64,000 nt of DNA from positions 868,001 through 932,000 of the forward strand of contig CDROCS010001382.1 in assembly GCA_977020255.1 (NCBI GenBank), in the 5' to 3' direction. Both the position numbers and the translations under genes were made by a program. Below are positions 1,729-20,250 of the stretch, piece after piece. Source of the stretch: Obrimoposthia wandeli (taxonomy: Eukaryota). Position 1 is the first letter of the stretch; the number at the start of each line of letters is the position of its first letter. The notes under the pieces are model-generated. The model was not told the origin of the DNA. It was given only the letters and a program-made list of their open reading frames with translations, and ran no database searches.

Positions 1729-2051
1729 TGTTAGGATTAGGTTTTGTTAAAATTAAATAATTAGTTGAATTTATAGTGAATTTATAGTAAAATGAAAATC
1801 CTTGAAAACAAGGTTAAAATTAAATAAAATTTAAATTTAAAATTAAAATGTTAAAAGTAAAAGGAAAATTGAATATTAGAGGACCACGAAGGTCGTGTGA
1901 AATGCGTGAATATATATAATATTAGTTTAAAAAACAAAAGTGCAAAAAAGAAAATTAATTAGAAGATTAACGAAAAGGAAATTAAGAAACGAAGAAAATA
2001 ATCCACGTCGTCAGCCACGTCACCAACAGAAGTAGCAGCTGTTTTCCCGAG

Positions 2052-2096
2052 GTGAGTGGTGACCGGAATTTGCATTAATTAACTTACTAATTTCAG
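2052..2096 (+). other. Predicted 45-nt spliceosomal intron inside the LTR (also 20774-20818)
   Basis: AG|GTGAGT donor, TTACTAAT branch-like motif and TTTCAG| acceptor; identical in both LTRs and close in size to the 43-nt host HPD intron 1. Confidence 0.7.
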
Positions 2097-2412
2097 GACC
2101 GAGAAGCAAGAGGAATCGATTGTCAACTGAGTGACAGACACATACCTGCATAAGCTCTTCAAAATCTACACAGAAATAGACTATATAAGTCTACACTGGA
2201 ATAACCGCAAACCACACACGATCCCCAAAAAAGAAGAGAAGAAGTCATATTATCAAGGAGAAGAAACAGAGTAGACGAATCCACGAATTAAAGGTAAAAG
2301 GAGAAACATCAGCATCACCAAAATTAATACAATACGCGCAGGTCTCGCAGCAACCAGATCTCACTGTCGATATCAACAGCTCAATTCCATTGTTGCAGTT
2401 CAATCGTGCAAG

Positions 2413-2523
2413 TCGCCGCTGCTCAATTCACAGTTGCAGCCCAAGCTCTCAAATTCGCCGCTGCTCAATTCACAGTTGCAGCCCAAGCTCTCAAATTCGC
2501 CGTTGTTCAATTCTACAGTTGCT
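2413..2523 (+). repeat. 42-bp tandem repeat in the LTR (~2.6 copies in 5' LTR, ~1.6 in 3' LTR)
   Basis: Unit tcgccgctgctcaattcacagttgcagcccaagctctcaaat starts at 2413, 2455 and 2497 (partial). Confidence 0.9.
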
Positions 2524-2603
2524 GTCCAGCAGTTCATTTCTGTCTCGCCAATTCGAGAGGACTCATTGATAACCGGAGCAACTAAAGGTATAAATACCGC
2601 AAC

Positions 2604-2958
2604 TTTAAAGGAATTTTGTAACAGTTATTTGAATTTGGAATCATAAATTTAAAGGAATTTTGTAACAATTATTTGAATTTGGAATCATAAATTTAAAGGA
2701 ATTTTGTAACAATTATTTGAATTTGGAATCATAAAATTAAAGGAATTTTGTAACAATTATTTGAATTGGGAATCATAAATTTAAAGGAATTTTGTAACAA
2801 TTATTTGAATTTGGAATCATAAAATTAAAGGAATTTTGTAACAATTATTTGAATTTGGAATCATAAAATTAAAGGAATTTTGTAACAATTATTTTGAATT
2901 GGGAATCATAGATTTAAAGGAATTTTGTAACAATTAATTGAATTGGGAATCATAAATT
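2604..2958 (+). repeat. 44-bp minisatellite in 5' LTR (~8 copies)
   Basis: Unit aaatttaaaggaattttgtaacaattatttgaatttggaatcat with period 44. Confidence 0.95.
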
Positions 2959-3482
2959 GAAAAAGATACTTTGAACCCTAAAATAATCTGTTTTATCAAA
3001 AAGATCTAAACTACCCATAATTTTGAGCAACCAGCTCTAAATTCGTTCCCTATTTTTAGAGCAACCAGCTCTCCAAAATCTGTGCCCTGAGTTTATCCAC
3101 AAGCTAGAGTAAAGACTCAAATAAGCTAACCGACCTTAACGTAAAATCGATACGTGGTTCATCCCCACTTGTGTAGAGACTTACAGAAGTCTTAGGAATT
3201 TTACTACCACTTTTTAGAGAATACGTACGTAAACGTATTGTTGTGTTTAATCTAGTGTGTTAACAATAAACGATTTCCTACATTAGAAAGCATTGTTTTA
3301 AACCCTTCAGATTAAGAGACATCAAAAACAAACACCTTCAGATAAGCAATTGAGACAGGCAACCATAACATTAAGTAGGCCACGATCAACTTTAAGACCT
3401 GCTTCTACAGAACTCACGTTGGGGCCCTCCACATTCAAGAGGATCTATATAAGTTTCATATAGAAACCCCAACATATTAAAG

Positions 3483-3500
3483 TGGTGTCCCGAGTGAGGA
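3483..3500 (+). promoter_or_regulatory. Primer-binding site resembling the complement of the 3' end of elongator tRNA-Met
   Basis: TGGTGTCCCGAGTGAGGA matches at 16/18 the complement of the vertebrate elongator tRNA-Met 3' end (TGGTGCCCCGTGTGAGGA, recalled); it lies 8 nt after the LTR end. Confidence 0.75.
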
Positions 3501-3544
3501 TAGCTCGTCGGACACAGCGAATTCACATAGAATAGAGAGCAAAC

Positions 3545-3885
3545 TGAGAATAAGTTATTGAAGAAATAAGTAAATTGAGAATAAGTTTCAGAAGAAGAAA
3601 ATATAAGTAAATTGAGAATAAGTTTCAGAAGAAGAAAATATAAGCAAATTGAGAATAAGTTTCAGAAGAAGTAGATATAAACAAATTGAGATAAGATAAT
3701 TGATAAGTTTTGAGAAATCGAGTAGATTTGTTCCTCGAGTTAAGAATTTGATAAGTTTTGAGAAATCGAGTAGATTTGTTCCTCGAGTTAAGAATTTGAT
3801 AAGTTTTGTAAAATCGAGTGGATTTGTTCCTCGAATTGAGTAAATTTGATAAAGTTGAGAATCGAGTGGATTGTTACTCGAGGTA
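3545..3885 (+). repeat. Two tandem-repeat blocks in the 5' leader (~38-bp and ~48-bp units, 3-4 copies each)
   Basis: gagaataagtttcagaagaagaaaatataagtaaatt repeats are followed by gataagttttgagaaatcgagtagatttgttcctcgagttaagaattt repeats. Confidence 0.85.
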
Positions 3886-4342
3886 ATTAATTGAATAGGT
3901 TAAGTCGAGAGACGTGTCCTCGAACTAATAAAAGAGATATAAGAAATCGTAAAATAAGAATTGTGAAATAAGATAAAATAATAAGTAAATTGATATCGTA
4001 AACGAATACATAATTGATAAGACAACGGATAATAGAAAAGGACCCGCGTATAATACTAGAAGACAAAGTCAGATTCCCCAGGAAGAGATAAATAATAATA
4101 AATTTAACCGAATTGAACAGGTTCCCCAAACAGATAACAAAGTAACAGAAAAGACTAGAATCGAAGAAAACGTATCAGAAAGAGACGTTGATCAATCAGC
4201 GGTTTCAACCGACAGTTTTAATTTGACTGAATTATTTGGTGACATAAACCCAGAAGAATTTGAAATTGCCAATCCAGTAGTGATTGAGGAAGTTCAAGTG
4301 AAAAATATTGAAGAAATAGTTGAGGAGGATATAGTTGGAAAT

Positions 4343-6457
4343 ATGGCTCAACCAGGAGCTCAAGCAGATAATAATGCAGGAAATAATGTAGGAGAAATGA
4401 ATGCAGAACAGTTGGCACTAGCCTTAAATGCGACGTTGAGACCCAACTTTTCGGGATCATTGCAGATTACAAAGTTTAAAGGAGATGAGGAAAGTATTTG
4501 TGACTTCCTCGCAGAATATTCGAGTTGTGCAGATGTTCAAGGATGGAACGATAGAGAAAAATGTGTCCGTGTACAGGCACACTTAACCGGATTAGCACTT
4601 GAAGTGTATAAACATTTGACAGAAGTAGAACGTTTAGATTGGGCAACGTTGGAAAATGCTTTTATTGGAAAATTGGTATTGGGAGATTTAGCAAAAGTGA
4701 ATAAGCGAATCATGAGAGAACGGAAACAGAAACATGACGAAGGCGTGAATGAATACGCGTATGTTTTGAGAACCTTGGCCGCAAGAGCGTACCCAAGAAG
4801 AATAATGAGAAATCAGGACGGTATTCCTGTAGCTCCAGAAGCACAAGCAGCGGAAAATAACCGGAACCAAGATGAAATGGCAGAAGTTTTGTTAGACATA
4901 TTTAGAGGAGGACTGAAAAAAGATATTAAAGTGTTATTAGCAGTATCGGACACGAATGATTTTGATAACGCCGTACGAAAGGCGAGAGAGATTGAGAAAA
5001 ATATAAAAAATAACGCAGCAATGGCAATTTACGCAATGACTGCAGGTGATGACGATAAGACAAAGGTATTTGTGAATAAGACAGAACCGAGTAATTTTCA
5101 GAATCGAAATTATGGACAAAATAAGTTTGAAAAAGGAGATGAATCCAGTAACGGAAACAGAGATAATTTCCGAAATAGGAATCGAGATGATTCCAGAGGT
5201 AGAAAAAGTAATGATTCGTGGAATAGAAATAGAGATGATTCCAGGAATAGATTTAGTAGAGATAATTCAGGAAATCGCCAACCGTGGAGAGGAGACGATA
5301 GGAATTATAACGCAAACAGAGGAGAGCGAAGTGACTCTCGATTTGAAAATAATACAGGAAGTAGTGACGGAAGATTCAATAATCGAGGAAGCGGTTATAA
5401 TTCCGATAAAGATATACTTACGGGAATTCTCAGGCAAGTGAAGCCGAAGTTGTTCAAAATGTACAAAGATGAAACAACCGATATAACAGACAATTTGACT
5501 AAAGCAGTCAGATCACAAATGTCTGCAGTAAAGAGAATGACTGCGAATCATGTATACCATGCATCAATAGATAGATTTTATGACGGTGAAGTTTTAGCAA
5601 GATTATGTGGAAACCAGACTACGAATAAAAAGTTGATTACGGCGATCACATATCTATGTTTCCAATTGACGGAACGAACGAGCCAACCTCACGAAGTCAA
5701 ACAAGGAATAAATGAAGCGATGTATTTGATCGAAAATGTATTGCAGAGACGAATCGACGAAAACGGAGGTTGGGCAAAATTAAGTGACTACGCTAAAACC
5801 ATTGTGGAAATGAACGAAGACGATGACGAACAATGTCATGAAAATCGTCAAAGAGAAAATAAACAATACCATTCGAAAGAAAGAAACAATCAACCAAATA
5901 TGTCCACAACAATGATGATGATGATGTTAGTAATGTTCATGGGAATGCAACAGGCATCAGGGTTGATAGCATACGACTGTAGCATACCAAAGATGGGACA
6001 AAAGTATTCACTGCTTGACAGCGAAAACTGTCCAGAATCACAACCGTCAAAATTAGAAGTTAAAGGTGTTGAAAACTACTTTGTGTATCAGGATGTTGAT
6101 AAGATACAAGTAGAAGTGAAAGAATGTTCAGTTCATTCAAGTTATTACGAATTCTATTGTGGCCATATAAGTTTTATGTCGGAAATCACACCTACCACAC
6201 CGTACAAAGTACATAAGGTTTTTTCGAGAGATTGCGAAGACGCATTTCGAACAGGAACAATAGAAATAGACAAGAATTACAAGCCTGATGTAAAAGTTGG
6301 AGTAAGACAATACGAAACAGTCACGAGAGTAGGACAACGATGGCCTGATGGATCGTGTGACGGAGGAACAAAAAAACGTGCGTGGAACCAAAGTAACAGA
6401 GTTAGTAATGGACGTAACTTACAAAATAGAATTAAAAACATGGACCGCCAATTTTGA
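4343..6457 (+). CDS. gag: Polyprotein part 1: Gag (~4343-5008), Arg/Asp/Asn/Ser-rich region (~5090-5407), Bcl-2-like domain (~5411-5800), signal peptide (5900-5962), N-terminal part of class III glycoprotein
   Basis: Retrotransposon capsid-like motifs (KFKGDEESICDFL, GWND, QKHDEGVNEYAYVLRTLAARAYP, FRGGL); RRIDENGGWAKLSDY resembles BH2; MMMMMLVMFMGMQQASG|LIAYDC. First ATG at 4343, but the frame is open from 3989. Confidence 0.85.
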   Translation: MAQPGAQADNNAGNNVGEMNAEQLALALNATLRPNFSGSLQITKFKGDEESICDFLAEYSSCADVQGWNDREKCVRVQAHLTGLALEVYKHLTEVERLDWATLENAFIGKLVLGDLAKVNKRIMRERKQKHDEGVNEYAYVLRTLAARAYPRRIMRNQDGIPVAPEAQAAENNRNQDEMAEVLLDIFRGGLKKDIKVLLAVSDTNDFDNAVRKAREIEKNIKNNAAMAIYAMTAGDDDKTKVFVNKTEPSNFQNRNYGQNKFEKGDESSNGNRDNFRNRNRDDSRGRKSNDSWNRNRDDSRNRFSRDNSGNRQPWRGDDRNYNANRGERSDSRFENNTGSSDGRFNNRGSGYNSDKDILTGILRQVKPKLFKMYKDETTDITDNLTKAVRSQMSAVKRMTANHVYHASIDRFYDGEVLARLCGNQTTNKKLITAITYLCFQLTERTSQPHEVKQGINEAMYLIENVLQRRIDENGGWAKLSDYAKTIVEMNEDDDEQCHENRQRENKQYHSKERNNQPNMSTTMMMMMLVMFMGMQQASGLIAYDCSIPKMGQKYSLLDSENCPESQPSKLEVKGVENYFVYQDVDKIQVEVKECSVHSSYYEFYCGHISFMSEITPTTPYKVHKVFSRDCEDAFRTGTIEIDKNYKPDVKVGVRQYETVTRVGQRWPDGSCDGGTKKRAWNQSNRVSNGRNLQNRIKNMDRQF

Positions 6458-8777
6458 TAAAAAGACACAACGAATGATGAAGTATCCGGAATGTAAAATG
6501 ACAGATGCATCTTGTTTTACAGGTGAATCCACAATTGTGTATCACGTGAATCCGAAACAATGCTCTTTAGTATTTTTGAAAGAAATTAGTTTTAATAAAA
6601 TAAAAGGGTTCCTGTATAATAAAGATGGAGAAGGGTTCCTGTATAATAAAGTTGGAGAAGGATTTCACAATGAAACAAGACCAATTCCTATGACGGCGAC
6701 ACCTACACTGTTAATGGCAACATCAACAGAAGAAGGATTGATATTTATTAAAAAGAGAAATAAAGCACGATGCGGAATGACTGTTAGTACTACAAACTAT
6801 CCTGGAATAGTTTTGTCCAGAGAATTAATAGCATTGGCAGAAACCAAGCTAAAACCTAGAGATATGCAGCTACACACGTATTTTAATAATAAAATTGATT
6901 TTTATTATCATAAAGGATTGATGCAAATGGAACAGTTATATCGGATGATGATCGAGAGAGATTGCCAGCTAAACAAAGAGATCGTAAGAACAAAGTTAGC
7001 ATTAGCTATTACGAATCCAGACATGGTAGCACCATTATTACCCTTGGATGAAGGAGTATTTGCTAAAACCATGGGAGAAGTATTGTATACTTACAAGTGT
7101 AATAAAGTAGAAGAACAGTTGAGAAAAACAAGCCGATGTACGAGTGAATTGGCAGTAACACATTATTTAAAAGAACTCTTTGTTGAACCAATCACGAGAA
7201 TGATACTTCCAAAAGACACTCCAACCAAAGAAATCAGCTGCTCTAATATAATGGCACCTGAATATCAGATGACGAATGATCTATGGATAACGCTACCTGA
7301 CCGAAAGCCAACGAAAACTCCAGAGATGATAAAAATGACGAATCTTAAAGGAAAAATGAAATTCGAAGCGGTAGAAAATATGGAAAATGCAGGTTTGTAC
7401 AATGAGAAAGACTTAAAAGCGGCCTGGAACGAAATAATGTTTCCATTAAAAAGAGCCAGAGTACTTACGGAGATGGTGCAGCGAGCATTACCGCCAGGAG
7501 CTAGATATGTGAATTTTGATATGTTATTATTGCCAAGTCATTTCAAGGAAGCAGCACATCAGACACTTAGAAAGATGTGGGGGAAATTCCTTGTTTTAGG
7601 ACAGTTATTTTCAGGTATCATAGGTATTTATGTTATAATTAAATTTGTGCAGGTAATTATAGCCCAGGTGTTATCTACATATAGTTTATACAGGATAGCC
7701 GGAATCACCTGGCAACTTATAATTGGATGTTTTCCATTTTTAGCGAAATATCTAATGCACCATCATCACGAGAACGAGTTGCGAGCCCTCAAGAAGGAGC
7801 AACATCAAACGAGAACCATGATGCGAGAATCAAGAAACTATCGAGACGACAACGACGACGATAATGATAGTCCAGGAGAATATGCAAAGATACCAGGAAA
7901 ACCAAAAATTCCGTTACCAGATAAGGAAGAAGTGGCGTTAAACCTATATCCAATGAAGGAACTAAAGGAAGAGAAGGAAAATTTTAAGAGAGGCATTTTA
8001 ATGATAAGATGGCCTAAAGTGAGCTACAGTGAGATTCCACAAGCAGAGGAAAAATACAAAAAAGATAATTCCAGAAGAATTCTAAAGTCTAGGATATCCA
8101 ATGAGAATCCAAATGCTCCACCACAAGTAGCAGTAACACTGAACGGAAGAGAATATCTTGCTGAAGTTGATACTGGATCTGCAGTATCAGTACTGAGTAA
8201 AGAAATCTTGTCATCAAAAGAATTAAAGGAAGTATGTCCTAGAAAACAGACATTTGTTAACGTGAATGGTACAGATGTAATGTCAGAAGGAACACTGAAA
8301 TGTTCATTGAATATCGATAGAAGAGCATTGCAGTTAAATGCTAGAATATTCAGAGATTGTGGTAGCCCAGTCATGATTGGGATGGACGTAATAAGGATGT
8401 TTGAAGGAATAATTATATTACCAAATAACAAGAGTTATAAGAACGACAGTTCATTGAGAGAGATAAAAATGTTGAGAGGACCTATAGTCGAAAAGGAAAA
8501 ATACACTATGTTCCGTATGGGAAATCCGTACCAAGATAAGAAACAGGAAGCGCTAGTAAAGTCGATACTTCACTACAAAGATGTAAACTCCGGACCACAA
8601 GCTATGACGAGGAGGAAAATAACATATGTGAATCTGTCAGAAAAGGATCCCATGAGATTCGAGAAAAATAGTCGAAAATCACTAGAACTGTACTATTCAA
8701 AAGAAATGGCACGTAAAATGGCAAGAACAGGATTAGAAATGTTAAAGCGACAAGTAGTTATGGTCATGAGGAAGTAG
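6348..8777 (+). CDS. env: Polyprotein part 2 (after +1 shift at the A7 run 6370-6376): rest of chuvirus-like glycoprotein with TM region (to ~7757), retropepsin 1 (~8124-8420), start of BIR1
   Basis: Motifs recalled from chuvirus G proteins (DCQLNKEIVRTKLALAITNPD, GEVLYTYKC, LFVEPITR, AGLYNEKDL, IMFP, hydrophobic C-terminus); VDTGS at 8166 and IGMDV. Confidence 0.85.
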   Translation: MDRVTEEQKNVRGTKVTELVMDVTYKIELKTWTANFDKKTQRMMKYPECKMTDASCFTGESTIVYHVNPKQCSLVFLKEISFNKIKGFLYNKDGEGFLYNKVGEGFHNETRPIPMTATPTLLMATSTEEGLIFIKKRNKARCGMTVSTTNYPGIVLSRELIALAETKLKPRDMQLHTYFNNKIDFYYHKGLMQMEQLYRMMIERDCQLNKEIVRTKLALAITNPDMVAPLLPLDEGVFAKTMGEVLYTYKCNKVEEQLRKTSRCTSELAVTHYLKELFVEPITRMILPKDTPTKEISCSNIMAPEYQMTNDLWITLPDRKPTKTPEMIKMTNLKGKMKFEAVENMENAGLYNEKDLKAAWNEIMFPLKRARVLTEMVQRALPPGARYVNFDMLLLPSHFKEAAHQTLRKMWGKFLVLGQLFSGIIGIYVIIKFVQVIIAQVLSTYSLYRIAGITWQLIIGCFPFLAKYLMHHHHENELRALKKEQHQTRTMMRESRNYRDDNDDDNDSPGEYAKIPGKPKIPLPDKEEVALNLYPMKELKEEKENFKRGILMIRWPKVSYSEIPQAEEKYKKDNSRRILKSRISNENPNAPPQVAVTLNGREYLAEVDTGSAVSVLSKEILSSKELKEVCPRKQTFVNVNGTDVMSEGTLKCSLNIDRRALQLNARIFRDCGSPVMIGMDVIRMFEGIIILPNNKSYKNDSSLREIKMLRGPIVEKEKYTMFRMGNPYQDKKQEALVKSILHYKDVNSGPQAMTRRKITYVNLSEKDPMRFEKNSRKSLELYYSKEMARKMARTGLEMLKRQVVMVMRK

Positions 8778-9277
8778 AACGATGCGTATGGTGTAGAGTA
8801 AAATTTAGAAAATGGGAGAAGAATGAAAACCTTATGAAACGTCATAAAAGAGATGCACCAAATTGTCCATTTCTCTTGAAACTGAAAACTTCAAACGTAC
8901 CAGAAATCCAAATGGGAAAAGCACCCGATTTCGATTACAGTGACGAGATTCCAAAAGGAGAATCAGCTCTAATAGTAGGCAGAGTAATAACAAATAGCCG
9001 AATTGAAGACATATTCGAAGTTATGCGAGAAGTGAACGAATGTGACGAACAATATCGAGAAGTAACTTTCGAAGATCCAAGACTTAAAAAATTTGCAAAA
9101 AAGGGACTTTTTGCTATAAAAAAGGATGGTAAAGACGTAATTAAATGCCACAAGTGTAAAAAAGAACGAATTATCGACAGATATACTCTTGAGTTACCTA
9201 AGAAAACGTTACATAATGAATTTTGCGAATTTTGTAATTCTAAAAACAAAATAAAGCAAAAAGAACAGAAAACCTAA
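8734..9277 (+). CDS. Polyprotein part 3 (after -1 shift near 8733): BIR1 C-terminal half and BIR2
   Basis: CVWC-x16-H-x6-C (RCVWCRVKFRKWEKNENLMKRHKRDAPNCPFL). Adding one T at ggatt(t)aga restores KMARTGF. Second CHKC-x18-H-x6-C is preceded by FAKKGLF. Confidence 0.85.
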
Positions 9278-12034
9278 TGTATAATCGAATATCAAATCAC
9301 ACGGAAAGAGATTTTGGCTCAACAAGACACACCGGTAGTGTCATTCGTGAGAAGACTATATCCAAAAGAAGCAGAAAGAATCAGAGATTTGGTAGAATTA
9401 AAAATAAAAACTACGCGAAACGGATACGGATCGATTTTTGAATTACTAAAAGATAAAGATGACAGTACAATTGAAACAAAAGAGAAAGAGTACATAAACG
9501 AACTAGAATACGTACTAGAAGATCCGGAATGCGCAGTTTGCATGGTCAACAAAATAGAAGTTGCCTTTTTACCATGCGGACATGTAAGAACATGTCGGAG
9601 ATGTGCGAAGGAAATGGTATCATGTCCAATTTGTAGAAGGATAATAGATCGGCAAGTGGGAAATATTAGATTTCACTATCCAAACAAAGGAAGTGGACCG
9701 ACAGAGTTTAATAATTCGATAAATACAATATACCATATGGGAAATATAAATGGAGCACAGCGACCAGCAGCTATCATTAGAGTAAATAATTTAAGAGTAA
9801 AAGCCTTAATTGATACAGGTGCTGTAGCTTCGATAGTAAGTGAAGATTGTTTGACAGAGGAACAAAAACGAACAATGGCAGAACCAGATGAATTCTTGGT
9901 ATCGGTCAATGGAGACCCTGTAAAAGTGACGGGAATATTACCATGTACATTTATAATTGGACGTAATACGATCACTATACCAGTTAGAATCATGAAAGAA
10001 TGTCCTGAACCTACAATTTTAGGAATGGATGTACTATCACAACTCAAAGGGATAAGTATTGATTTACAAGATCCAAGATTGAAGGATAGCACATCAAACA
10101 GACAAATAAACCAAATTGATGTAATTATAGAAAATCCTATAAAAATCGGTAAAAGATCACAATTTGTCATTCAAGGTCACACATTATCAGAAGATAAAGG
10201 ACCAGTTGTGTTCGAACCATCACGGGATTTCATAGAGAAATACGAATTACCAGTTGTGAGTACAGTATGTCTGATTGAAAACCACAAAATACCAGTTAGA
10301 CAGATGAATACAACAAACAATGACATCCTATTATACAGAGGAATGAGGTTGGGAAAGATAGCACAGATGGAGAATTCCACCGTGTGTGCTATGAAACTCG
10401 ATAAAGATACGAATGATTACGAAGAAATAGTAATCCAATCAGAAAGACTGACAACCAGAGAAAAGAAACAATTACTCGACCTAATACATAAATTTCCGAA
10501 AGTAATTGCAAAAAATCCATATGACATAGGAGAAACACCTGTCATAAAACACACAATACCGCTGACAGAAGACAAAGTAGTCAGAAGAAGACCATATCGA
10601 GTACCATTACAGTTACACGACGAAGTCAAAAGCCAGATCGAAGATATGTCTAAAACAGGAGTAATTAGACCGAGTTTTTCACCATTCTCAGCACCTGTAG
10701 TGTTGGTAAAAAAGAAGGATGGGAAAATGAGATTATGTATAGATTTCAGAGAACTGAACAAGATCACAAGAAAAGATGTGTATCCATTACCTAGAATCGA
10801 AGAGATGCTCGATAAATTGGGTAATTCAGATTATTTTACGACATTGGATTTGCAGAGTGGATACTGGCAAATCGAGATAGAGGAAGAGGATAAACACAAA
10901 ACAGCCTTTTCCTGCGGAGATGGACTATACGAATGCGAAAAGATGCCATTCGGACTGACAGGAGCGCCAGCAACATTTCAGCGTTGCATGAATTTTGTAC
11001 TCGCATCGTGTGCAAACACGATGGTTTATATCGATGACATAATAATATTTTCGAAAACGTTCGAAGAACATTTAAAAAATCTTGAAGTTGTATTTAAAAG
11101 ACTGGAAAACGCTAAATTAAAAGTTAAACCTACAAAATGCGAATGGGCTAAAGAGCGAGTAACATTTTTAGGACATCTAGTATCGAAAGAAGGCATCCGA
11201 CCTGATCCAGCAAAGATCGAGAAAGTAAAAGCGCATTTAGCGCCAAAGACTGTTAAGGAAATACAAAGTTTTTTAGGTCTTGCAAACTATTATAGACGAT
11301 TTGTTGAACATTTTTCAGATATAGCAACACCATTGAGAAAGTTGACGAGGAAAGATGAGAAGTTCATATGGGGAAAGGAAGCACAACAAGCGTTCGAACA
11401 TTTGAAAGAAAGACTGATAAAAGCACCAATATTAGCGTTTCCAGATATAAACCGACAATTCATACTTATGACAGATGCAAGTAACTATGCTGTAGGAGCA
11501 GTATTGGGACAAGAGGATGACGAAGGAAGAGAACACGTCATCGCGTATGCGAGTAGAGGATTAAACAGAGCCGAAAGAGGATACTCTGTTATTGAAAAGG
11601 AATGTCTAGCCATAGTGTATTCATGTAGACAGTACAGACACTACTTGCTAGGACAAAAAGTATTACTATATACAGATCACAAACCACTACAGTTCTTATA
11701 TAAACACAGAGACGAGATGAGTAGATTAAATAGATGGTTTCTAAAATTGGCCGAATTTGACCTAGAGATCCTTTATAGAACCGGAAAGTCGAATGGCAAC
11801 GCAGATTGTTTGTCGAGGTTGACAAATGTAGACGAGAAAGGAAACATAATTCCAGAAGAAGAACAAGATGAAACCAACGACCAAAAAGGAAAAGCAAATC
11901 TATTAACGATTTTGCTGAAGACGGGTAAAATAGACAAAGATATCATCAAAGAACAGAAAGAAGATGAAGAACTGAGTCTAATCAAAGAACTGTTGGTGAA
12001 AGGAGATCTAAACGATGAAATGACGAAAAAATAA
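9278..12034 (+). CDS. pol: Polyprotein part 4: UBA-like domain, IAP-type RING (~9527-9650), retropepsin 2 (~9767-10060), reverse transcriptase, RNase H
   Basis: CAVC...LPCGH..C..C....CPICR; LIDTGA; LCIDFRELN, DLQSGYWQI, MPFGL..APATFQ, YIDD; TDAS, EKECLAI, TDHKPL, NADCLSR. Same frame as part 3, separated only by TAA at 9275. Confidence 0.95.
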   Translation, partial: CIIEYQITRKEILAQQDTPVVSFVRRLYPKEAERIRDLVELKIKTTRNGYGSIFELLKDKDDSTIETKEKEYINELEYVLEDPECAVCMVNKIEVAFLPCGHVRTCRRCAKEMVSCPICRRIIDRQVGNIRFHYPNKGSGPTEFNNSINTIYHMGNINGAQRPAAIIRVNNLRVKALIDTGAVASIVSEDCLTEEQKRTMAEPDEFLVSVNGDPVKVTGILPCTFIIGRNTITIPVRIMKECPEPTILGMDVLSQLKGISIDLQDPRLKDSTSNRQINQIDVIIENPIKIGKRSQFVIQGHTLSEDKGPVVFEPSRDFIEKYELPVVSTVCLIENHKIPVRQMNTTNNDILLYRGMRLGKIAQMENSTVCAMKLDKDTNDYEEIVIQSERLTTREKKQLLDLIHKFPKVIAKNPYDIGETPVIKHTIPLTEDKVVRRRPYRVPLQLHDEVKSQIEDMSKTGVIRPSFSPFSAPVVLVKKKDGKMRLCIDFRELNKITRKDVYPLPRIEEMLDKLGNSDYFTTLDLQSGYWQIEIEEEDKHKTAFSCGDGLYECEKMPFGLTGAPATFQRCMNFVLASCANTMVYIDDIIIFSKTFEEHLKNLEVVFKRLENAKLKVKPTKCEWAKERVTFLGHLVSKEGIRPDPAKIEKVKAHLAPKTVKEIQSFLGLANYYRRFVEHFSDIATPLRKLTRKDEKFIWGKEAQQAFEHLKERLIKAPILAFPDINRQFILMTDASNYAVGAVLGQEDDEGREHVIAYASRGLNRAERGYSVIEKECLAIVYSCRQYRHYLLGQKVLLYTDHKPLQFLYKHRDEMSRLNRWFLKLAEFDLEILYRTGKSNGNADCLSRLTNVDEKGNIIPEEEQDETNDQKGKANLLTILLKTGKIDKDIIKEQKEDEELSLIKELLVKGDLNDEMTKK

Positions 12035-13909
12035 TCGATAAAAGAAGGAATCTTGTATATTGTCAACAATGTCGGAAAGATAGTAGTAGTAATTCCGAAG
12101 TCATTGAAAACAGCAGTGATGATCCAGTATCACGATGGAACACTAGGAGGACATCTGTCAGGACGAAAGACAATAGCCAGAATCAAAGAGAAGTACCATT
12201 GGGATGGTATGGAAGACGACATAAAACAATGGTGTAAACAATGTAAAGTATGTTTAACCAGAAAAGACACTGGAACTCGTACTAAAGTTCCACTGAAACC
12301 AATGCCAGTTCCTTTGGCACCAATGGAATTCACAGCGATGGATATATTGGGACCATTGAGAGAATCAAGTAAAGGAAACAAGTACGTCATAGTATTTACG
12401 GACTACATGACGAGATGGGTAGAAGCATACCCCATGCAAAATCAGAAGGCTGAAACAATAGCGCAGATCTTAGTGGAAGAGATAATATTTCGATACGGAG
12501 TGCCTAGAAAGTTGTTAACAGATCAAGGAAAGAACTTCACTGGAGAAGTAATAAAAGCAGTATCGAAGATATTCGGAATCATGAAGTTACAAACTTCACC
12601 ATATCACCCACAAACCAATGGTCTAGTAGAAAGGTTTAATAAAACTTTATGTATGATGGTACAATCCTATTGCTCAGACAAACAAGAGGATTGGGATAAA
12701 TATTTACCTTCATGTTTATATGCTTACAGGAATTCAGTTCGAGAGGCGACGGGTCACACACCATTATATCTGATGTATCTCAGACAGAACAATATGCCAA
12801 TGGATCTGGAGTGGACCGAACCAACATCTCAATATTTAGAAACTGAACAATACATTGTCGTCATGAAAGAAAGATTACAAGATGCTTGGACCAAAGCCGG
12901 ATTGAAGTTGAAATTCAATCAAGAAGGTTACAAGGAACAATATGACAAAAAGGCAAAACCACATGAATTTAGAGTCGGAGATCAAGTGATGATATTTTAT
13001 CCAGTCATCGAACCAGGTCTATCGTTTAAACTTCATAGACCATACAAAGGCCCATACAAGGTGATACAGACAACCTCAACGAACTTGAAAGTAATCAACG
13101 AGGAAAATCGGAACAAGGAACCGATGATTGTACATGCAAATCGATGTAAATTAGTACCAAATAAAGATAACGCGTCACGATATGAGTTAAGATCACAAAA
13201 TTTGAAGCCGAATACCAATACCATTAAACTTACACGAATGGTAAGTGATCGGAACTACATAAACATGATGACAAGTGGTAGCGAGGAAAAACCAGCGAGA
13301 ATTGGTATGCTCAGAGTGAAGCACCAAAAGGAAAAAGAAGTAATCCGACACATCGCACCACAAGAAGACATAATAGTTGTTTTCGAAAAAACACAACCAA
13401 CAGATGTGGCGAAAGAAGTCATTGTGAAAGATGCACTAACAAACGAATTTCTGTGCGAACTTAGAGTATCATACTACGACGGAAATACACTAGTCGCAGC
13501 ACTACATCAAAACTCCAATGTGTTTACGACTGAGAAAGTGATAATCGAAATCACATTGACACCAAACATAGTTGCATGGCAGAACTATGACAGTACTGAA
13601 GCAGGACTAGCCAGTCAGGAAGAAAAGGAACCGGCCGGTGGTCACATACTGCATGGTACACCAAAAAGACTCAAACAAGAATACCACGATGTGATAATGG
13701 TATTACGTAATTCACATGAGAGAAGAGATATAATGAGAGTTCATTTAATCGACGCTGACACTGAAAAGATAATCTGTCAGATGGACACCAAATACTTTGA
13801 CGGAAAGACCATTGTATGTAGTATACCGGAATCTCACCGGTTAAACACAGATCAAACGGAAGTATCTGTAAGGTTGAGCGTAATAGAAGGATTTCATTCG
13901 CCAACCTAA
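12035..13909 (+). CDS. pol: Polyprotein part 5: integrase (HHCC, DDE core, GPY) plus two copies of a beta-rich repeat domain
   Basis: YHDG..GGH...C..C, MDILGP, TDQGKNF, PYHPQTNGLVERFN, YKGPYKV; repeats carry Y(Y/F)DG.T. In frame across TAA at 12032. Confidence 0.93.
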   Translation, partial: SIKEGILYIVNNVGKIVVVIPKSLKTAVMIQYHDGTLGGHLSGRKTIARIKEKYHWDGMEDDIKQWCKQCKVCLTRKDTGTRTKVPLKPMPVPLAPMEFTAMDILGPLRESSKGNKYVIVFTDYMTRWVEAYPMQNQKAETIAQILVEEIIFRYGVPRKLLTDQGKNFTGEVIKAVSKIFGIMKLQTSPYHPQTNGLVERFNKTLCMMVQSYCSDKQEDWDKYLPSCLYAYRNSVREATGHTPLYLMYLRQNNMPMDLEWTEPTSQYLETEQYIVVMKERLQDAWTKAGLKLKFNQEGYKEQYDKKAKPHEFRVGDQVMIFYPVIEPGLSFKLHRPYKGPYKVIQTTSTNLKVINEENRNKEPMIVHANRCKLVPNKDNASRYELRSQNLKPNTNTIKLTRMVSDRNYINMMTSGSEEKPARIGMLRVKHQKEKEVIRHIAPQEDIIVVFEKTQPTDVAKEVIVKDALTNEFLCELRVSYYDGNTLVAALHQNSNVFTTEKVIIEITLTPNIVAWQNYDSTEAGLASQEEKEPAGGHILHGTPKRLKQEYHDVIMVLRNSHERRDIMRVHLIDADTEKIICQMDTKYFDGKTIVCSIPESHRLNTDQTEVSVRLSVIEGFHSPT

Positions 13910-14722
13910 CCGGAAGTAACAAACAATAAAATCATTAAAGCAACGGCAGAGTTACGCATTGACAGCGGATACCGCAAGTGGGAAGCTAAAAATAAACCAC
14001 AACGAATCAATATGATCCGAGAACAAGTGACAACCTCAATCCAACCAAAATATCATGCTGAAATAGTATCATCCGCACCAAGTGTGATTACATCGATAAA
14101 CGACGAAATTATAATTTTACTAAAAAATCGATGGCCGTCATCAACCGAGATACGAGTCAATTTAATTAATTATGCGAAAACACCGATATCTAAGCTGAAT
14201 GTCACCTATTTCGATGGATTGACTATCATGGGTAAATTGGAAACAATTGTCATGTGCTATGGAGCACAGTTCCAAGTTGAGATACTTAAGGATAGTGTAA
14301 TACCGTATCCGATTCACAGATACGCAGGACCAGTCAATCCAATTATTCTAACCCCTTCATTAATTTCAGTTCAGACAGACATACCAGAATACCCTTCGAG
14401 CGAGTCTAGTCAAGACAGCGAACCTGAAAGTAGCGATCCAGAATCAACAGAATCCGAAGATAACATAATAGAGCGATTCGAAAAAACCATGGAGGTTGAA
14501 TTCGCTAAAGAAAGCAGAAAAAGACAAAACATAGAATTCGTGAAACAGAATATACAAGAAAGACGAATTAAATCTGCAGAAGAGACCGAGTCGGAAGAGG
14601 AACCAACAAAGGAACAGACATCAGAGACAAAGATGAATATCTCTCCAGCAATACGAATGCTGAGAGGAAAGAAACTAGCGAAACTATCCAACATCGACGG
14701 ACAAATAAAGAAGAGATTATAA
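13910..14722 (+). CDS. Polyprotein part 6: third copy of the repeat domain and an acidic Ser-rich linker
   Basis: In frame across TAA at 13907; EIIILLKN...RVNLI...TYFDGLTI aligns with the copies at ~13298-13560 and ~13637-13890. Confidence 0.75.
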   Translation, partial: PEVTNNKIIKATAELRIDSGYRKWEAKNKPQRINMIREQVTTSIQPKYHAEIVSSAPSVITSINDEIIILLKNRWPSSTEIRVNLINYAKTPISKLNVTYFDGLTIMGKLETIVMCYGAQFQVEILKDSVIPYPIHRYAGPVNPIILTPSLISVQTDIPEYPSSESSQDSEPESSDPESTESEDNIIERFEKTMEVEFAKESRKRQNIEFVKQNIQERRIKSAEETESEEEPTKEQTSETKMNISPAIRMLRGKKLAKLSNIDGQIKKRL

Positions 14723-18487: not shown

Positions 18488-18611
18488 TAAGTCAGAGGAG
18501 GTTGTAGATAAATTAGTGTGTGAAATATGTAGAAATATCTAGAAGCGATTGTACAAATAAGTAGAAATATGTAAAACTCATGTAGAAATTAATCATCATC
18601 ATGTATTTAGA

Positions 18612-18911
18612 ATGTCCGAAGAATGCCCAATATGTTTGGAAGATCTAACCGAACAAAGAACAAGACCCGAAACCTGCAACCATTTACATCACGAGGAATG
18701 TTTATCAAAATGGATCAGAACTTATGGAAAATTCGTACATCCAACATACCCTCGTTGCCCTGTATGCAGAAGACAATTCACAAAGTTCATCATGATAGAA
18801 CCCAACCAAAAGGATGTATATGTACAGGTGATATTCTGTTGGAAGAATTTCAGAGAGTGTTGGTGTTACTACTGTCTGTCAGAACGACAAAATCCGACCA
18901 CTTTTGTGTAA
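18612..18911 (+). CDS. Small RING-H2 protein 1 (99 aa), putative E3 ligase
   Basis: CPIC-x13-CNHLHHEEC...W...CPVC; acceptor TATTTAG ends 1 nt before the ATG. Confidence 0.85.
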   Translation: MSEECPICLEDLTEQRTRPETCNHLHHEECLSKWIRTYGKFVHPTYPRCPVCRRQFTKFIMIEPNQKDVYVQVIFCWKNFRECWCYYCLSERQNPTTFV

Positions 18912-18971
18912 ACATCGCACAACCACCAGTCCTCAATCGAGCCCAAATTCAACATTAACCCTCTCACAGTA

Positions 18972-19277
18972 ATGTCTGGAGAATGTTCCATCTGCTACGA
19001 GAACATCGTGGACCTCTACACCAAACCCAACAACTGCAACCACCAGTTCCACATCGAATGCCTCGAGACGTGGATCCCAATAGCCAACAACAACAATCCC
19101 CTCGACTACCCAAACTGCCCGATGTGCAGAGCAACCTTCTCGGTGCACTACGTCTACAACCGGGACAGCCTCCAAGCAGTGGTACCCATTGTACACTGTT
19201 GGAAAAACATCTGCGACTGCTGGTGTTCGTTCTACGTGGAGGAGCGACGCACAGGCCAGCCCAACACCCAGCAGTAA
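18972..19277 (+). CDS. Small RING-H2 protein 2 (101 aa), paralog of protein 1
   Basis: CSIC...CNHQFHIEC..W...CPMC and shared C-terminal CWKN..CWC; acceptor TTAACCCTCTCACAG ends 2 nt before the ATG. Confidence 0.85.
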   Translation: MSGECSICYENIVDLYTKPNNCNHQFHIECLETWIPIANNNNPLDYPNCPMCRATFSVHYVYNRDSLQAVVPIVHCWKNICDCWCSFYVEERRTGQPNTQQ

Positions 19278-19628
19278 CCGAAGGTAACTTTCTGACTTAA
19301 AACGTGACATCATGAACTACCCCTGTGTATCGCATACCGCGATAAATTAGCTACCATAATTGTAATCATAATTGTATAATCTTGTGAAACTGTAAAATGA
19401 CCATTACCATTTTTATGTATGTTGTTTATTTGAAATTGTAATTATTATACTGAAACAAAAGACAATTTTTATGCTTAGTATAAATGTGAAAAAACATGCC
19501 TAAAATCGGAACAAAACTCGGTAGGATTAAAATACTAAGGTTTATAATATTGAAACTAAAATATTAATTGCGTAAATTAATGTTAAAACCAATCGAACCC
19601 AAATTAAAAAAGTAATTATTTTGTGCAG

Positions 19629-20141: not shown

Positions 20142-20250
20142 CACTGATTTCCCCTTCATCCTTTTCTTGACCGCAACAATTAACATGACATCCAACCCAT
20201 TCACCTTCCTGATCCTTTCCTTGTCTGTAAATCATTTTTTCTTTGTGTAT

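What the first reader, a model, noticed from the sequence alone, without database searches (positions are those of the whole stretch)
5900..7757. Chuvirus-like class III fusion glycoprotein placed upstream of pol inside the polyprotein
Seen: internal signal with five Met from an (ATG)5 run, A-S-G|LIAYDC cleavage site, Cys-rich ectodomain, hydrophobic C-terminus and an in-frame 27-bp duplication (FLYNKDGEGFLYNKVGEGF). Known: these motifs resemble Chuviridae/gB-like G proteins, which BEL/Pao elements have captured; retroelement env normally lies 3' of pol as a separate ORF. Inference: an independent capture by a Gypsy lineage in which Pol translation must pass through an ER-translocated protein.
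Basis: partly seen in the sequence, partly recalled or inferred. Interest (0 to 1): 0.88.

Follow-up and report, generated by a model that had tools for sequence, protein, structure and literature searches.

The report
Flatworm giant retroelement with in-frame glycoprotein
A 21-kb Gypsy-type retrotransposon in a flatworm genome carries a chuvirus-like membrane-fusion glycoprotein gene between gag and pol; the feature is real, but this layout is already published for planarian 'Burro' elements and nematode endogenous retroviruses, and this copy is damaged.

Summary

**What it is.** Window 5900-7757 is a genuine Monjiviricetes-type (chuvirus-like) fusion glycoprotein.
- Pfam PF24664 matches its two pieces at E=1.9e-18 and 1.6e-69.
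- The best named relative is the Tacheng tick virus 4 glycoprotein.
- Structure models of an intact relative and of the window's own larger piece match only herpesvirus gB among solved structures, so the fold is class III.

**Where it sits.** It lies in a 20.9-kb Ty3/Gypsy element (1729-22624) with LTRs, TG..CA ends and a 4-bp target duplication, in a flatworm genome. The domain order is gag, Bcl-2-like, G, PR, BIR, RING, PR, RT, RH, IN.

**Lineage trait.** Relatives about 40% identical keep G inside uninterrupted gag-G-PR and G-PR-RT-RH-IN reading frames. It is therefore not a nested insertion.

**Not new.** An in-frame env between gag and pol was described for planarian Burro elements in 2019 (PMC6431247). 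Nematode ERVs with env ahead of pol followed in 2022, and GAG-ENV-POL elements of Platyhelminthes, Bryozoa and Nematoda in 2026 (PMC13524379).

**This copy is broken.** Between gag and IN there are two frameshifts (one inside G) and two premature stops.

The parts
1729..22624 (+). Whole LTR retrotransposon (20.9 kb), flanked by a 4-bp target-site duplication CTCT (1725-1728 and 22625-22628)
   Evidence: Self-BLAST of the ends and reading of the ends. The termini are TG...CA.
1729..3474 (+). 5' LTR (1746 bp) with a 44-nt tandem array of 8.1 copies at 2604-2962
   Evidence: It is 98.2-99.1% identical to the 3' LTR over the aligned blocks.
20451..22624 (+). 3' LTR (2174 bp). The same 44-nt array has 17.1 copies (21358-22112), and there is a 74-bp duplication (20826-20974).
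4223..13909 (+). gag-to-integrase polyprotein gene, treated as one broken gene: two frameshifts and two premature in-frame stops
   Evidence: ORF list and translations, counts only, and Pfam domains. Relatives carry the same domains in uninterrupted ORFs.
4451..5152 (+). Gag (capsid-like) region
   Evidence: There is no Pfam hit of its own. BLAST shows homology to the gag of relatives, including L001 7005-7502; that stretch lies in L001's gag ORF, where Pfam finds Retrotrans_gag. It is followed by an Arg/Asn-rich basic stretch with no CCHC knuckle.
5570..5780 (+). Bcl-2-like stretch (BH1-BH2 region, with an ...NGGW... motif) directly upstream of the G signal peptide
   Evidence: Weak evidence: Pfam Bcl-2 E=0.065. 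A profile of window plus two relatives hits almost only Bcl-xL chains, at E 0.3-2. Relative P0004 gives Bcl-2 at E=9.6e-4. The position matches the BCL2-like motif published for Burro (PMC6431247).
5900..7757 (+). Chuvirus-like class III fusion glycoprotein domain (signal peptide to end of the hydrophobic tail), interrupted by one frameshift
   Evidence: Pfam PF24664, profile search, alignment with relatives, models and fold searches, and 14 of 14 conserved Cys kept.
5900..5962 (+). Internal signal-peptide-like stretch including the (ATG)5 run (5912-5926). The predicted signal-peptidase site follows A-S-G.
   Evidence: Relatives P0001, P0003 and P0004 have a hydrophobic stretch followed by x-Y-D-C at the same alignment position. 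Cleavage is inferred from the -3/-1 rule; no predictor was run.
6609..6662 (+). In-frame 27-bp tandem duplication (25 of 27 identical) in a variable surface loop
7581..7688 (+). Transmembrane anchor of G. A weaker hydrophobic stretch follows up to 7757.
   Evidence: Kyte-Doolittle analysis with a 19-residue window, maximum 2.32. The region is modelled as a long helix.
8127..8396 (+). First aspartyl protease domain (PR1), in the same frame as the C-terminal part of G
   Evidence: Pfam Asp_protease_2 and gag-asp_proteas, E about 1e-5. Relatives P0001 and P0002 have G followed by PR domains in one ORF.
8783..9652 (+). IAP-like module: the C-terminal half of a BIR domain with a CX2CX16HX6C motif (8783-8866), plus an IAP-type RING (9521-9652)
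   Evidence: BIR E=6.7e-8, profile positions 34-69 of 70. RING zf-C3HC4_3 E=2.7e-12. The best solved matches are the RINGs of cIAP1, cIAP2 and XIAP, at E about 1e-10 to 1e-11.
9758..10051 (+). Second aspartyl protease domain (PR2)
   Evidence: Pfam RVP and gag-asp_proteas
10706..11758 (+). Reverse transcriptase and RNase H
   Evidence: Pfam RVT_1 E=1.2e-38 and RT_RNaseH E=4.1e-39. The closest RTs belong to G-carrying relatives, at 58-61% identity.
12092..12652 (+). Integrase (H2C2 zinc domain plus catalytic core)
   Evidence: Pfam Integrase_H2C2 E=3.4e-19 and rve E=9.8e-13
14750..18487 (+). Accessory ORF: a dual-specificity phosphatase domain (14783-15166, HCX5RS signature present), a second degenerate DSP-like stretch, then a tail with four strong hydrophobic segments
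   Evidence: Pfam DSPc E=6.6e-41. PDB best match is DUSP10 at E=5.7e-25. No counterpart was found in the relatives at hand.
19623..20141 (+). RING-H2-like ORF in a GC-richer stretch just upstream of the 3' LTR. A second C-P-M-C-R motif copy lies near 19100.
   Evidence: Pfam zf-RING_2 E=2.5e-6, repeat D6, and GC 0.40-0.47.

Best explanation
The region is the envelope-type gene of an endogenous retrovirus-like Ty3/Gypsy element of a flatworm. It belongs to, or sits next to, the giant planarian 'Burro' group. An ancestor of this lineage took a fusion glycoprotein from a Jingchuvirales/Mononegavirales-type RNA virus and fixed it in frame between gag (plus a Bcl-2-like module) and the protease. 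In intact relatives one long ORF runs through it. The likely mechanism (inferred) has four steps. (1) Gag and the Bcl-2-like part are made in the cytosol. (2) The internal signal peptide takes the nascent chain to the ER, and signal peptidase cuts after A-S-G. (3) The Cys-rich class III ectodomain folds in the lumen and is held by one transmembrane helix. (4) The chain continues on the cytosolic side into PR, the IAP-like module, PR, RT, RH and IN, which the element's own protease releases. This would work like the membrane-threaded structural polyproteins of flaviviruses and alphaviruses. The copy in the window is a decayed provirus. Its LTRs are 98-99% identical, but gag-to-IN holds two frameshifts (one in G, one between PR1 and the recognisable half of the BIR domain) and two premature stops.
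For: Shown by tool results. Element anatomy: LTRs, TG..CA ends and TSD. Domain order. G homology: PF24664; 2155 profile hits, with Tacheng tick virus 4 glycoprotein as the best standalone match at E=9e-65. Fold: the intact relative P0003 was modelled with ectodomain pLDDT mostly above 90. Its top 50 PDB matches are all herpesvirus gB, at E from 3e-15, and its best viral models are chu-like virus glycoproteins at E=4e-41. The window's own C piece has pLDDT 88.7, and all its top 50 matches are gB, best E=1.2e-4. Lineage trait: P0005, P0008, P0015 and P0016 hold G-PR-RT-RH-IN in one ORF; P0006, P0009 and P0017 hold gag(CCHC)-G(-PR) in one ORF. The closest RTs (58-61% identity) come from G-carrying elements. 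G is 33-46% identical to the embedded relatives (two fragmentary rows, at 15% and 21%, aside) but only 18-25% identical to standalone viral-type G. No repeats bound the G block. Host: a neighbouring dimethylargininase exon has only Platyhelminthes among its best named hits, at 57-64% identity. Literature: PMC6431247 section 7 and PMC13524379 describe the same layout. Inferred, not shown: signal-peptidase cleavage, membrane topology and protease processing.
Against: This copy cannot express the polyprotein as it stands. No expression or protein data were available. TM-scores to gB are modest (0.25-0.46), because monomer models of a multi-domain protein were compared with trimers in fixed conformations; the significance rests on Foldseek E-values. 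A second, weaker hydrophobic stretch follows the TM helix, and if it also spans the membrane the downstream PR would face the lumen. A strict 1:1:1 Gag:Env:Pol output is unlike retroviral stoichiometry. Identity with Burro itself could not be tested. The element is 20.9 kb rather than more than 30 kb, lacks CCHC knuckles and ankyrin repeats, and carries a phosphatase ORF that the Burro description read here (PMC6431247) does not mention.
Confidence: 0.85

Rival explanations
1. G is in frame but is not expressed by straight-through translation. Splicing or subgenomic messages give a gag-pol message without G and a separate G message, as for retroviral env. The shared frame would then be a by-product of compact coding.
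For: In relatives L001 and L003 the successive ORFs (gag, G, PR, RT-IN) are each offset by +1 frame. Expression there is therefore not a simple single ORF. The 1:1 Gag:Pol stoichiometry of a single polyprotein is unfavourable for particle assembly (established retrovirology).
Against: Several relatives keep 2100-3200-residue ORFs running through G into RT-RH-IN without any stop. That is hard to maintain unless it is translated. No splice signals were tested and no RNA data were available.
Confidence: 0.25
2. The G block is a non-retroviral endogenous viral element, or a nested insertion, that landed by chance inside one retrotransposon copy.
For: Chuvirus-derived glycoprotein fragments are common in invertebrate genomes and often lie near LTR elements (PMC7642597 and PMC10084718, abstracts).
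Against: The same order (gag, G, PR...) is found in at least 15 divergent relatives, with G in frame. RT and G diverge together. No direct or inverted repeats flank the block. The frame is continuous from the Bcl-2-like stretch into the signal peptide and from the TM tail into PR1.
Confidence: 0.02
3. The glycoprotein domain is retained but no longer acts as a fusogen. It might serve as a membrane anchor that brings Gag and Pol to ER membranes, or as a receptor-blocking or immune-related protein.
For: Fusion activity was not tested. The element also carries host-interaction modules (Bcl-2-like, IAP-like, phosphatase), which suggests selection for functions other than entry.
Against: All 14 family-conserved cysteines and 33 of 38 strongly conserved columns are kept. 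The full class III architecture, signal peptide and TM anchor are preserved across relatives about 40% identical. This is the pattern expected for a working envelope protein.
Confidence: 0.12
4. The frameshifts and stops are assembly or sequencing errors, and the genomic copy is in fact intact.
For: The two frame changes are of opposite sign, so gag and pol end up in the same frame. AT-rich, repeat-rich genomes assembled from long reads often carry indel errors.
Against: The two in-frame stops are substitutions, not indels. The LTRs differ by 1-2%, by repeat copy number and by a 74-bp duplication, so the insertion is old enough for damage to be expected.
Confidence: 0.12

Closest known systems
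Burro / GYPSM1 giant Gypsy-like LTR retrotransposons of planarians (Schmidtea mediterranea, Dugesia), as described in PMC6431247 section 7
   Same: The host is a flatworm. The element is a giant Gypsy with one huge polyprotein and env in frame between a BCL2-like motif and PR. It has a BIR domain and a RING finger, apoptosis and ubiquitin-related accessory modules, and tandem repeats in the non-coding parts. The env hits mononegavirus-type fusion glycoproteins.
   Different: The window element is 20.9 kb, against more than 30 kb. No CCHC knuckles, MATH_TRAF, dUTPase or ankyrin repeats were detected, although ankyrin is present in relatives L001 and L003. It has an extra dual-specificity-phosphatase and multi-TM ORF. 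Sequence identity to Burro1-4 could not be measured. The published note linked the env to gypsy Env (class I type) by HHpred, whereas the fold test here gives class III.
GAG-ENV-POL Ty3/gypsy 'errantiviruses' with HSV/gB-type ENV in Platyhelminthes, Bryozoa and Nematoda (Chary and Hayashi 2026, PMC13524379)
   Same: Gypsy pol, a gB-type (class III) env placed between gag and pol, and a flatworm host group.
   Different: Their screen kept candidate regions of at most 10 kb, so giant elements with accessory domains may lie outside it. Their element list was not available here.
Nematode endogenous retroviruses (Sacco et al. 2022, J Gen Virol 103:001739). The paper is not held here; the title and env/pol order come from PMC13524379 and further details from my own memory.
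   Same: A metavirus that captured an RNA-virus glycoprotein gene, with env ahead of pol. From memory, the arrangement is a continuous gag-env-pro-pol ORF with a Chuviridae/Nyamiviridae-like env.
   Different: The host phylum is Nematoda, not a flatworm. The accessory genes differ (from memory, a Upf1-like helicase). The relationship of the two env genes was not tested.
Mosquito BEL/Pao elements with Chuviridae-like glycoprotein ('Anakin'; Dezordi et al. 2020, PMC7642597)
   Same: A retroelement captured the same glycoprotein family.
   Different: The retroelement superfamily is BEL/Pao, not Gypsy. Per the cited literature, env lies downstream of pol as a separate ORF, and the hosts are arthropods.
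Glycoproteins of Chuviridae / Jingchuvirales and related Monjiviricetes (Pfam PF24664), for example Tacheng tick virus 4 G
   Same: Same protein family: about 650 residues, a signal peptide, x-Y-D-C at the mature N-terminus, conserved cysteines and a C-terminal TM anchor. The best viral fold matches are at E=1e-39 to 4e-41.
   Different: Those proteins are encoded as a separate gene of a negative-strand RNA virus. Identity to the window's protein is only 18-25%.
Herpesvirus glycoprotein B (solved class III fusogens)
   Same: Same overall fold by Foldseek, including a long central helix.
   Different: There is no detectable sequence similarity, at 8-17% identity in structural alignments. gB works with accessory glycoproteins, which nothing here suggests.
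Flavivirus/alphavirus structural polyproteins (a 'works like' comparison, not membership)
   Same: A cytosolic capsid-type protein is followed in the same ORF by an internal signal sequence and lumenal glycoprotein. Downstream enzymes sit on the cytosolic side and are released by signal peptidase plus a viral protease.
   Different: The genome types and proteins are unrelated, and the analogy is inferred from sequence anatomy only.

Membership tests
Ty3/Gypsy (Metaviridae) LTR retrotransposon | Two long terminal repeats with TG...CA ends and a short target-site duplication | tested here: met
   LTRs are at 1729-3474 and 20451-22624, 98-99% identical, with a CTCT duplication.
Ty3/Gypsy (Metaviridae) LTR retrotransposon | Domain order PR-RT-RH-IN with Gypsy-type RT_RNaseH and Integrase_H2C2 domains | tested here: met
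   Pfam results
Ty3/Gypsy (Metaviridae) LTR retrotransposon | RT closest to recognised Ty3/gypsy elements | tested here: met
   Named hits include 'ty3-gypsy subclass' and 'Transposon Ty3-G Gag-Pol polyprotein'. No formal tree was built.
Ty3/Gypsy (Metaviridae) LTR retrotransposon | tRNA primer-binding site next to the 5' LTR | tested here: inconclusive
   A TGG-initiated 17-mer starts 8 nt after the LTR. No tRNA gene lies in the window for comparison.
Monjiviricetes_fusion glycoprotein family (PF24664; Chuviridae-type G) | Score above Pfam's gathering cut-off (27 bits) | tested here: met
   The two pieces score 66.2 and 235 bits.
Monjiviricetes_fusion glycoprotein family (PF24664; Chuviridae-type G) | Family-conserved cysteine pattern | tested here: met
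   All 14 conserved Cys columns are kept, and 33 of 38 columns conserved at 85% or more.
Monjiviricetes_fusion glycoprotein family (PF24664; Chuviridae-type G) | Type I membrane protein layout: N-terminal signal peptide and C-terminal TM anchor | tested here: met
   Sequence and hydropathy, with the same layout in relatives. No dedicated topology predictor was available.
Monjiviricetes_fusion glycoprotein family (PF24664; Chuviridae-type G) | Encoded as a gene of a negative-strand RNA virus | tested here: not met
   It lies inside a DNA-integrated LTR element. It is a captured homologue, not a viral gene in place.
Class III viral fusion proteins (gB / rhabdovirus G / gp64) | Fold match to solved class III fusogens | tested here: met
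   For relative P0003 the top 50 matches are all gB, best E=3.4e-15. For the window's C piece the top 50 are all gB, best E=1.2e-4.
Class III viral fusion proteins (gB / rhabdovirus G / gp64) | Long central helix that forms the trimeric core | tested here: met
   A 48-residue helix is predicted in both models: H486-533 in P0003 and H175-222 in the window piece. Only monomers were modelled.
Class III viral fusion proteins (gB / rhabdovirus G / gp64) | Trimer with bipartite hydrophobic fusion loops; membrane-fusion activity | not tested
   No multimer prediction was available, and activity cannot be tested with these tools.
Burro / GYPSM1 planarian giant Gypsy elements | Host is a dugesiid planarian | tested here: inconclusive
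   The host is a flatworm. The order or family of the host was not determined.
Burro / GYPSM1 planarian giant Gypsy elements | env in frame between a BCL2-like motif and PR | tested here: met
   The env-PR link is clear. The BCL2-like motif is only weakly detected: E=0.065, and Bcl-xL profile hits at E 0.3-2.
Burro / GYPSM1 planarian giant Gypsy elements | BIR, RING and ankyrin accessory motifs in the polyprotein | tested here: inconclusive
   BIR (half a domain, E=6.7e-8) and an IAP-type RING are present. Ankyrin is absent here but present in relatives.
Burro / GYPSM1 planarian giant Gypsy elements | Total length over 30 kb with an ORF1 of about 4900 aa | tested here: not met
   The element is 20.9 kb in total, and gag-to-IN spans about 3200 codons.
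Burro / GYPSM1 planarian giant Gypsy elements | Sequence similarity to Burro1-4 reference sequences | not testable with these tools
   No reference sequence or accession was available. Grohme et al. 2018 is not held.
Nematode ERVs of Sacco et al. 2022 | Nematode host | tested here: not met
   The host gene's best named hits are all Platyhelminthes.
Nematode ERVs of Sacco et al. 2022 | env ahead of pol in a metavirus | tested here: met
   The layout is the same, but relatedness of the elements was not tested because the paper is not held.

The most novel reading that the evidence does not exclude
The element is not Burro itself but an undescribed flatworm lineage of envelope-carrying giant Gypsy elements. 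No protein among about 15 billion is more than about 46% identical to its G or about 61% identical to its RT. It carries an accessory set not described for Burro in the account read here (PMC6431247): a dual-specificity phosphatase with an intact active-site signature fused to a four-TM protein. It also has Bcl-2-like and IAP-like modules threaded into the same polyprotein as a class III fusogen. Related elements swap this cargo, carrying ankyrin repeats, an RNase T-like exonuclease or extra protease copies, which would point to a modular host-manipulation toolkit in a retroelement.
Probability: 0.35. Interest if true: 0.45.

Novelty: new member of a known kind. Interest (0 to 1): 0.3.

Why it matters
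The finding is a clean, well-supported example of a retroelement that took a fusion glycoprotein from an RNA virus and built it into its polyprotein. It bears on how retrovirus-like agents arise repeatedly in invertebrates. It also adds a direct fold test, showing that the flatworm env of this type is class III (gB/chuvirus-like); an earlier HHpred note had linked it to gypsy Env. The central claim, env in frame upstream of pol, has been in the literature since 2019 and was extended in 2022 and 2026. The value here is confirmatory and descriptive. The only possibly fresh element is the accessory cargo (phosphatase plus multi-TM ORF) and its variability among relatives.

Tried and rejected
- **PDB sequence searches.** Searches with the C piece and with the family profile found no relative, so the class III question needed a fold comparison.
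- **Word-indexed protein search.** It gave only four relatives. The exhaustive profile search was needed.
- **Host clues from RNA genes.** Rfam and tRNA scans of the window found nothing. The host was inferred from a neighbouring dimethylargininase exon instead.
- **Gag.** Pfam found nothing in the gag part even at E=1. Gag was recognised only through relatives.
- **Nested-insertion test.** A search for direct or inverted repeats bounding the env block found none.
- **Papers not held.** Sacco et al. 2022, Grohme et al. 2018 and the supplements of PMC13524379 are not held. Comparison with named nematode ERV, Burro and errantivirus sequences was therefore impossible.
- **Troyka elements.** I rejected them (PMC12440569), because they have CG..CG ends, 3-bp duplications and no env.
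- **Missing-segment check.** I rejected the idea that part of G is missing at the frame change. The two pieces together cover the family alignment without a large gap.

Full report
**1. The observation**

- An (ATG)5 run at 5912-5926 encodes five Met within a hydrophobic stretch that starts at 5900.
- A-S-G is followed by L-I-A-Y-D-C at 5963.
- An in-frame 27-bp tandem duplication lies at 6609-6662, with 25 of 27 bases identical. The repeat finder also reports it.
- A hydrophobic end reaches 7757, with a strong Kyte-Doolittle core at 7581-7688.
- The ectodomain is Cys-rich, with 14 Cys.

None of this is chance. Pfam's Monjiviricetes_fusion family (PF24664, 'Viral fusion glycoprotein') matches the N-terminal piece at E=1.9e-18 (profile 4-158). 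It matches the C-terminal piece at E=1.6e-69 (profile 246-631 of 653).

In this copy the glycoprotein is split between two reading frames by one frameshift inside the ectodomain. I searched the two pieces separately throughout.

**2. The surroundings**

The glycoprotein (G) lies in an LTR retrotransposon that spans 1729-22624 (20.9 kb).
- The 5' LTR is 1729-3474 and the 3' LTR is 20451-22624. Their aligned blocks are 98.2-99.1% identical.
- The ends are TG...CA, and a CTCT target duplication flanks the element.
- The LTRs differ in the copy number of a 44-nt tandem array (8.1 against 17.1 copies) and by a 74-bp duplication.

All long ORFs are on the plus strand. The domain order comes from Pfam and PDB sequence searches:
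- gag, recognised only through relatives;
- a weak Bcl-2-like stretch;
- signal peptide, G and TM anchor;
- a first aspartyl protease;
- half a BIR domain with a perfect CX2CX16HX6C motif;
- an IAP-type RING, whose best solved matches are cIAP1, cIAP2 and XIAP;
- a second protease, then RT, RNase H and integrase.

Downstream lies an ORF with a dual-specificity phosphatase domain (E=6.6e-41; closest solved match DUSP10) and four hydrophobic segments. One RING-H2-like ORF follows in a GC-richer stretch, with a second copy of its zinc-finger motif nearby.

The RT_RNaseH and Integrase_H2C2 domains, and the named Ty3/gypsy proteins among the RT hits, place the element in Ty3/Gypsy.

The host is a flatworm. 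A dimethylargininase exon at 46194-46844 has only Platyhelminthes among its best named homologues, at 57-64% identity. This also means the host is not close to the sequenced parasitic species.

**3. What the glycoprotein is**

A profile of the window's two pieces plus four relatives was run against 1.84 billion representative proteins. It found 2155 proteins at E<=1e-3.

The list is two-tiered.
- The top twenty or so (E<1e-80) include many long polyproteins of 1100-3200 residues with G embedded in them, alongside shorter fragments.
- Then come standalone proteins of about 650-700 residues. The best of these (E=9e-65) is the glycoprotein of Tacheng tick virus 4, a chuvirus.

The window's C piece is 33-46% identical to the embedded relatives, setting aside two fragmentary rows at 15% and 21%. 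It is 18-25% identical to the standalone proteins. The window keeps all 14 family-conserved cysteine columns and 33 of 38 strongly conserved columns.

Sequence searches of the PDB found nothing, so I compared folds.
- The naturally intact relative P0003 is 39% identical to the window's C piece. Modelled with a 130-sequence alignment, its ectodomain has pLDDT mostly above 90 and a 48-residue central helix.
- Its top 50 PDB matches are all herpesvirus gB, at E=3.4e-15 to about 1e-11 with probability 1.00.
- In the viral predicted-structure library its best matches are chu-like virus glycoproteins (E=4e-41 to 1e-29). Rhabdo-like, nyavirus and gB proteins follow.
- The window's own C piece has mean pLDDT 88.7. 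It also matches only gB in its top 50, with best E=1.2e-4.

TM-scores are modest (0.2-0.46), as expected when monomer models of a multi-domain protein are compared with trimers. The class III assignment is therefore supported. Trimer formation and fusion loops were not tested. The 27-bp duplication falls in a loop whose length varies among relatives and whose model confidence is low.

**4. Is the placement real?**

Yes, and it is a trait of the lineage.
- Relatives P0005, P0008, P0015 and P0016 carry G, PR, RT, RNase H and IN in one uninterrupted ORF.
- P0006, P0009 and P0017 carry gag (with a CCHC knuckle or gag homology) and G, with or without PR, in one ORF.
- P0001 and P0002 carry G followed by two PR domains.
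- Loci L001 and L003 show the order gag, G, PR, ankyrin plus PR, RT-RH-IN.
- The RTs most similar to the window's (58-61%) belong to G-carrying elements, so pol and G have diverged together.
- No direct or inverted repeats bound the G block.

In the window the frame runs without a stop from the Bcl-2-like stretch into the signal peptide, and from the TM tail into the first protease. The nested-insertion rival is thus nearly excluded.

All relatives with a known source come from one ENA assembly (ERZ25039515) or from mis-binned metagenome contigs. Their host is unknown.

**5. How it most likely works**

Shown: the anatomy above.

Inferred:
- Gag and the Bcl-2-like part are made in the cytosol.
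- The internal signal peptide directs the chain to the ER and is cut after A-S-G. A small residue at -3 and at -1 fits the rule, and the x-Y-D-C start of the mature protein is shared with relatives.
- The ectodomain folds in the lumen and a single strong TM helix anchors it.
- The remaining chain (PR, IAP-like module, PR, RT, RH, IN) stays cytosolic and is released by the element's protease.

This is how flavivirus and alphavirus structural polyproteins are handled. It is an analogy, not a relationship.

Three open points remain.
- A second, weaker hydrophobic stretch follows the TM helix, and it would invert the topology if it spans the membrane.
- The stoichiometry of a single polyprotein is unlike retroviral Gag:Pol ratios.
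- In L001 and L003 every successive ORF is offset by +1 frame. That could mean regulated frameshifting, decay, or systematic assembly error.

**6. State of this copy**

Between gag and the end of integrase there are two frameshifts and two premature in-frame stops.
- One frameshift lies inside the G ectodomain.
- The other lies between the first protease and the recognisable half of the BIR domain.
- The stops separate domains that are continuous in relatives (counts; domains; relatives).

The two frame changes have opposite sign. With LTRs 1-2% diverged, such damage is expected. Assembly error cannot be excluded for the indels. I give no positions and no corrections.

**7. Comparison with what is known**

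- Arkhipova and Yushenova 2019 (PMC6431247, section 7) describe the giant planarian Gypsy elements Burro/GYPSM1. These have Gag, MATH_TRAF, Ubi/SUMO-like, BCL2-like, env, PR, BIR, ankyrin, dUTPase, RT, RH and IN in one enormous ORF. [quoted passage not shown]
- Chary and Hayashi 2026 (PMC13524379) report Ty3/gypsy elements with gB-type ENV arranged GAG-ENV-POL in Nematoda, Bryozoa and Platyhelminthes. These elements are not monophyletic in the POL tree. The authors cite Sacco et al. 2022 for the nematode case. They also note that the Chuviridae-like glycoprotein of mosquito BEL/Pao elements occurs next to gypsy POL in several arthropod orders.
- BURRO1 is described as an abundant, active, intestine-enriched retrotransposon in S. 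mediterranea (PMC8532177).

The window's element shares the defining layout: Bcl-2-like, env, PR, BIR, RING, in a flatworm host. It differs in size (20.9 kb) and in the absence of detectable CCHC, MATH, dUTPase and ankyrin motifs. It also has the phosphatase and multi-TM ORF. Identity to Burro reference sequences could not be tested. I therefore file it as a new member of a known kind.

**8. Verdict**

Homology, class III fold and in-polyprotein placement hold as lineage traits. 'Independent capture' is undecided. The arrangement is already published. This copy is broken.
- Interest is low to moderate. The result is a solid confirmation with a direct fold test, plus some possibly new accessory cargo.

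No such place is repeated in this report. The consensus lines printed by the alignment tool were not used.

Noticed in passing
window 5570-5780: A Bcl-2-like stretch (BH1-BH2 region with an NGGW motif) lies immediately upstream of the G signal peptide. Statistical support is weak but consistent: Pfam E=0.065, profile hits almost only to Bcl-xL at E 0.3-2, and relative P0004 at E=9.6e-4. The position matches the BCL2-like motif published for Burro.
   Followed up: partly
window 8783-9652: An IAP-like module sits between the two protease domains. It has half a BIR domain with a perfect CX2CX16HX6C motif and a RING closest to those of cIAP1, cIAP2 and XIAP. Relatives L001 and L003 carry ankyrin repeats at the same position instead.
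   Followed up: partly
window 14750-18487: An accessory ORF inside the element has a dual-specificity phosphatase domain with the HCX5RS signature (closest solved match DUSP10) and a second degenerate DSP-like stretch. It also has four strong hydrophobic segments and three 57-nt (19-aa) Lys-rich repeats at 17882-18052. No counterpart exists in the relatives at hand, and it is not mentioned in the published Burro description.
   Followed up: partly
window 19000-20300: A GC-richer stretch (0.40-0.47, against about 0.37 elsewhere in the element) lies just before the 3' LTR. It holds one RING-H2-like ORF and a second copy of its C-P-M-C-R motif 639 nt upstream. It may be captured host sequence.
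   Followed up: no
window 2604-2962 and 21358-22112; L001 2457-4217: Both LTRs contain a 44-nt tandem array with different copy numbers (8.1 against 17.1). Relative L001 has 41-43-nt arrays upstream of its gag, so tandem repeats in the LTR or leader seem to be a trait of the lineage.
   Followed up: partly
window 3538-3886: The leader between the 5' LTR and gag holds 37-nt and 48-nt tandem repeats. A TGG-initiated candidate primer-binding site starts 8 nt after the LTR (3483-3499), further from the LTR than is usual.
   Followed up: no
L001 6669-23731; L003 6922-19477: In both relatives every successive long ORF (gag, G, PR, RT-IN and so on) is offset by +1 frame from the previous one, across nine junctions in total. 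This could be regulated +1 frameshifting, decay, or a systematic indel bias of that assembly.
   Followed up: no
L001 (ORFs 10001-13900, 13878-17231, 19892-23731); P0005, P0006: Relatives carry many aspartyl-protease-like domains per element (up to about six in L001), including copies downstream of integrase. The window has two.
   Followed up: no
L005 9547-11622; L002 7920-9260: Two relatives carry an RNase T-like (DEDD exonuclease) ORF downstream of integrase, where the window's element has the phosphatase ORF. The accessory cargo at this position varies between elements.
   Followed up: no
window 46194-46844 (+) and 58145-59752 (-): Host-side features: an exon-like ORF of a dimethylargininase (DDAH) gene, which was used to identify the host as a flatworm, and a 535-aa ORF with only a weak RING hit and unknown nature.
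   Followed up: partly
protein P0008: A 2627-residue G-PR-RT-RH-IN polyprotein of this lineage is deposited in NCBI as a hypothetical protein of a Flavobacteriaceae metagenome-assembled genome. This is almost certainly a mis-binned eukaryotic contig.
   Followed up: no
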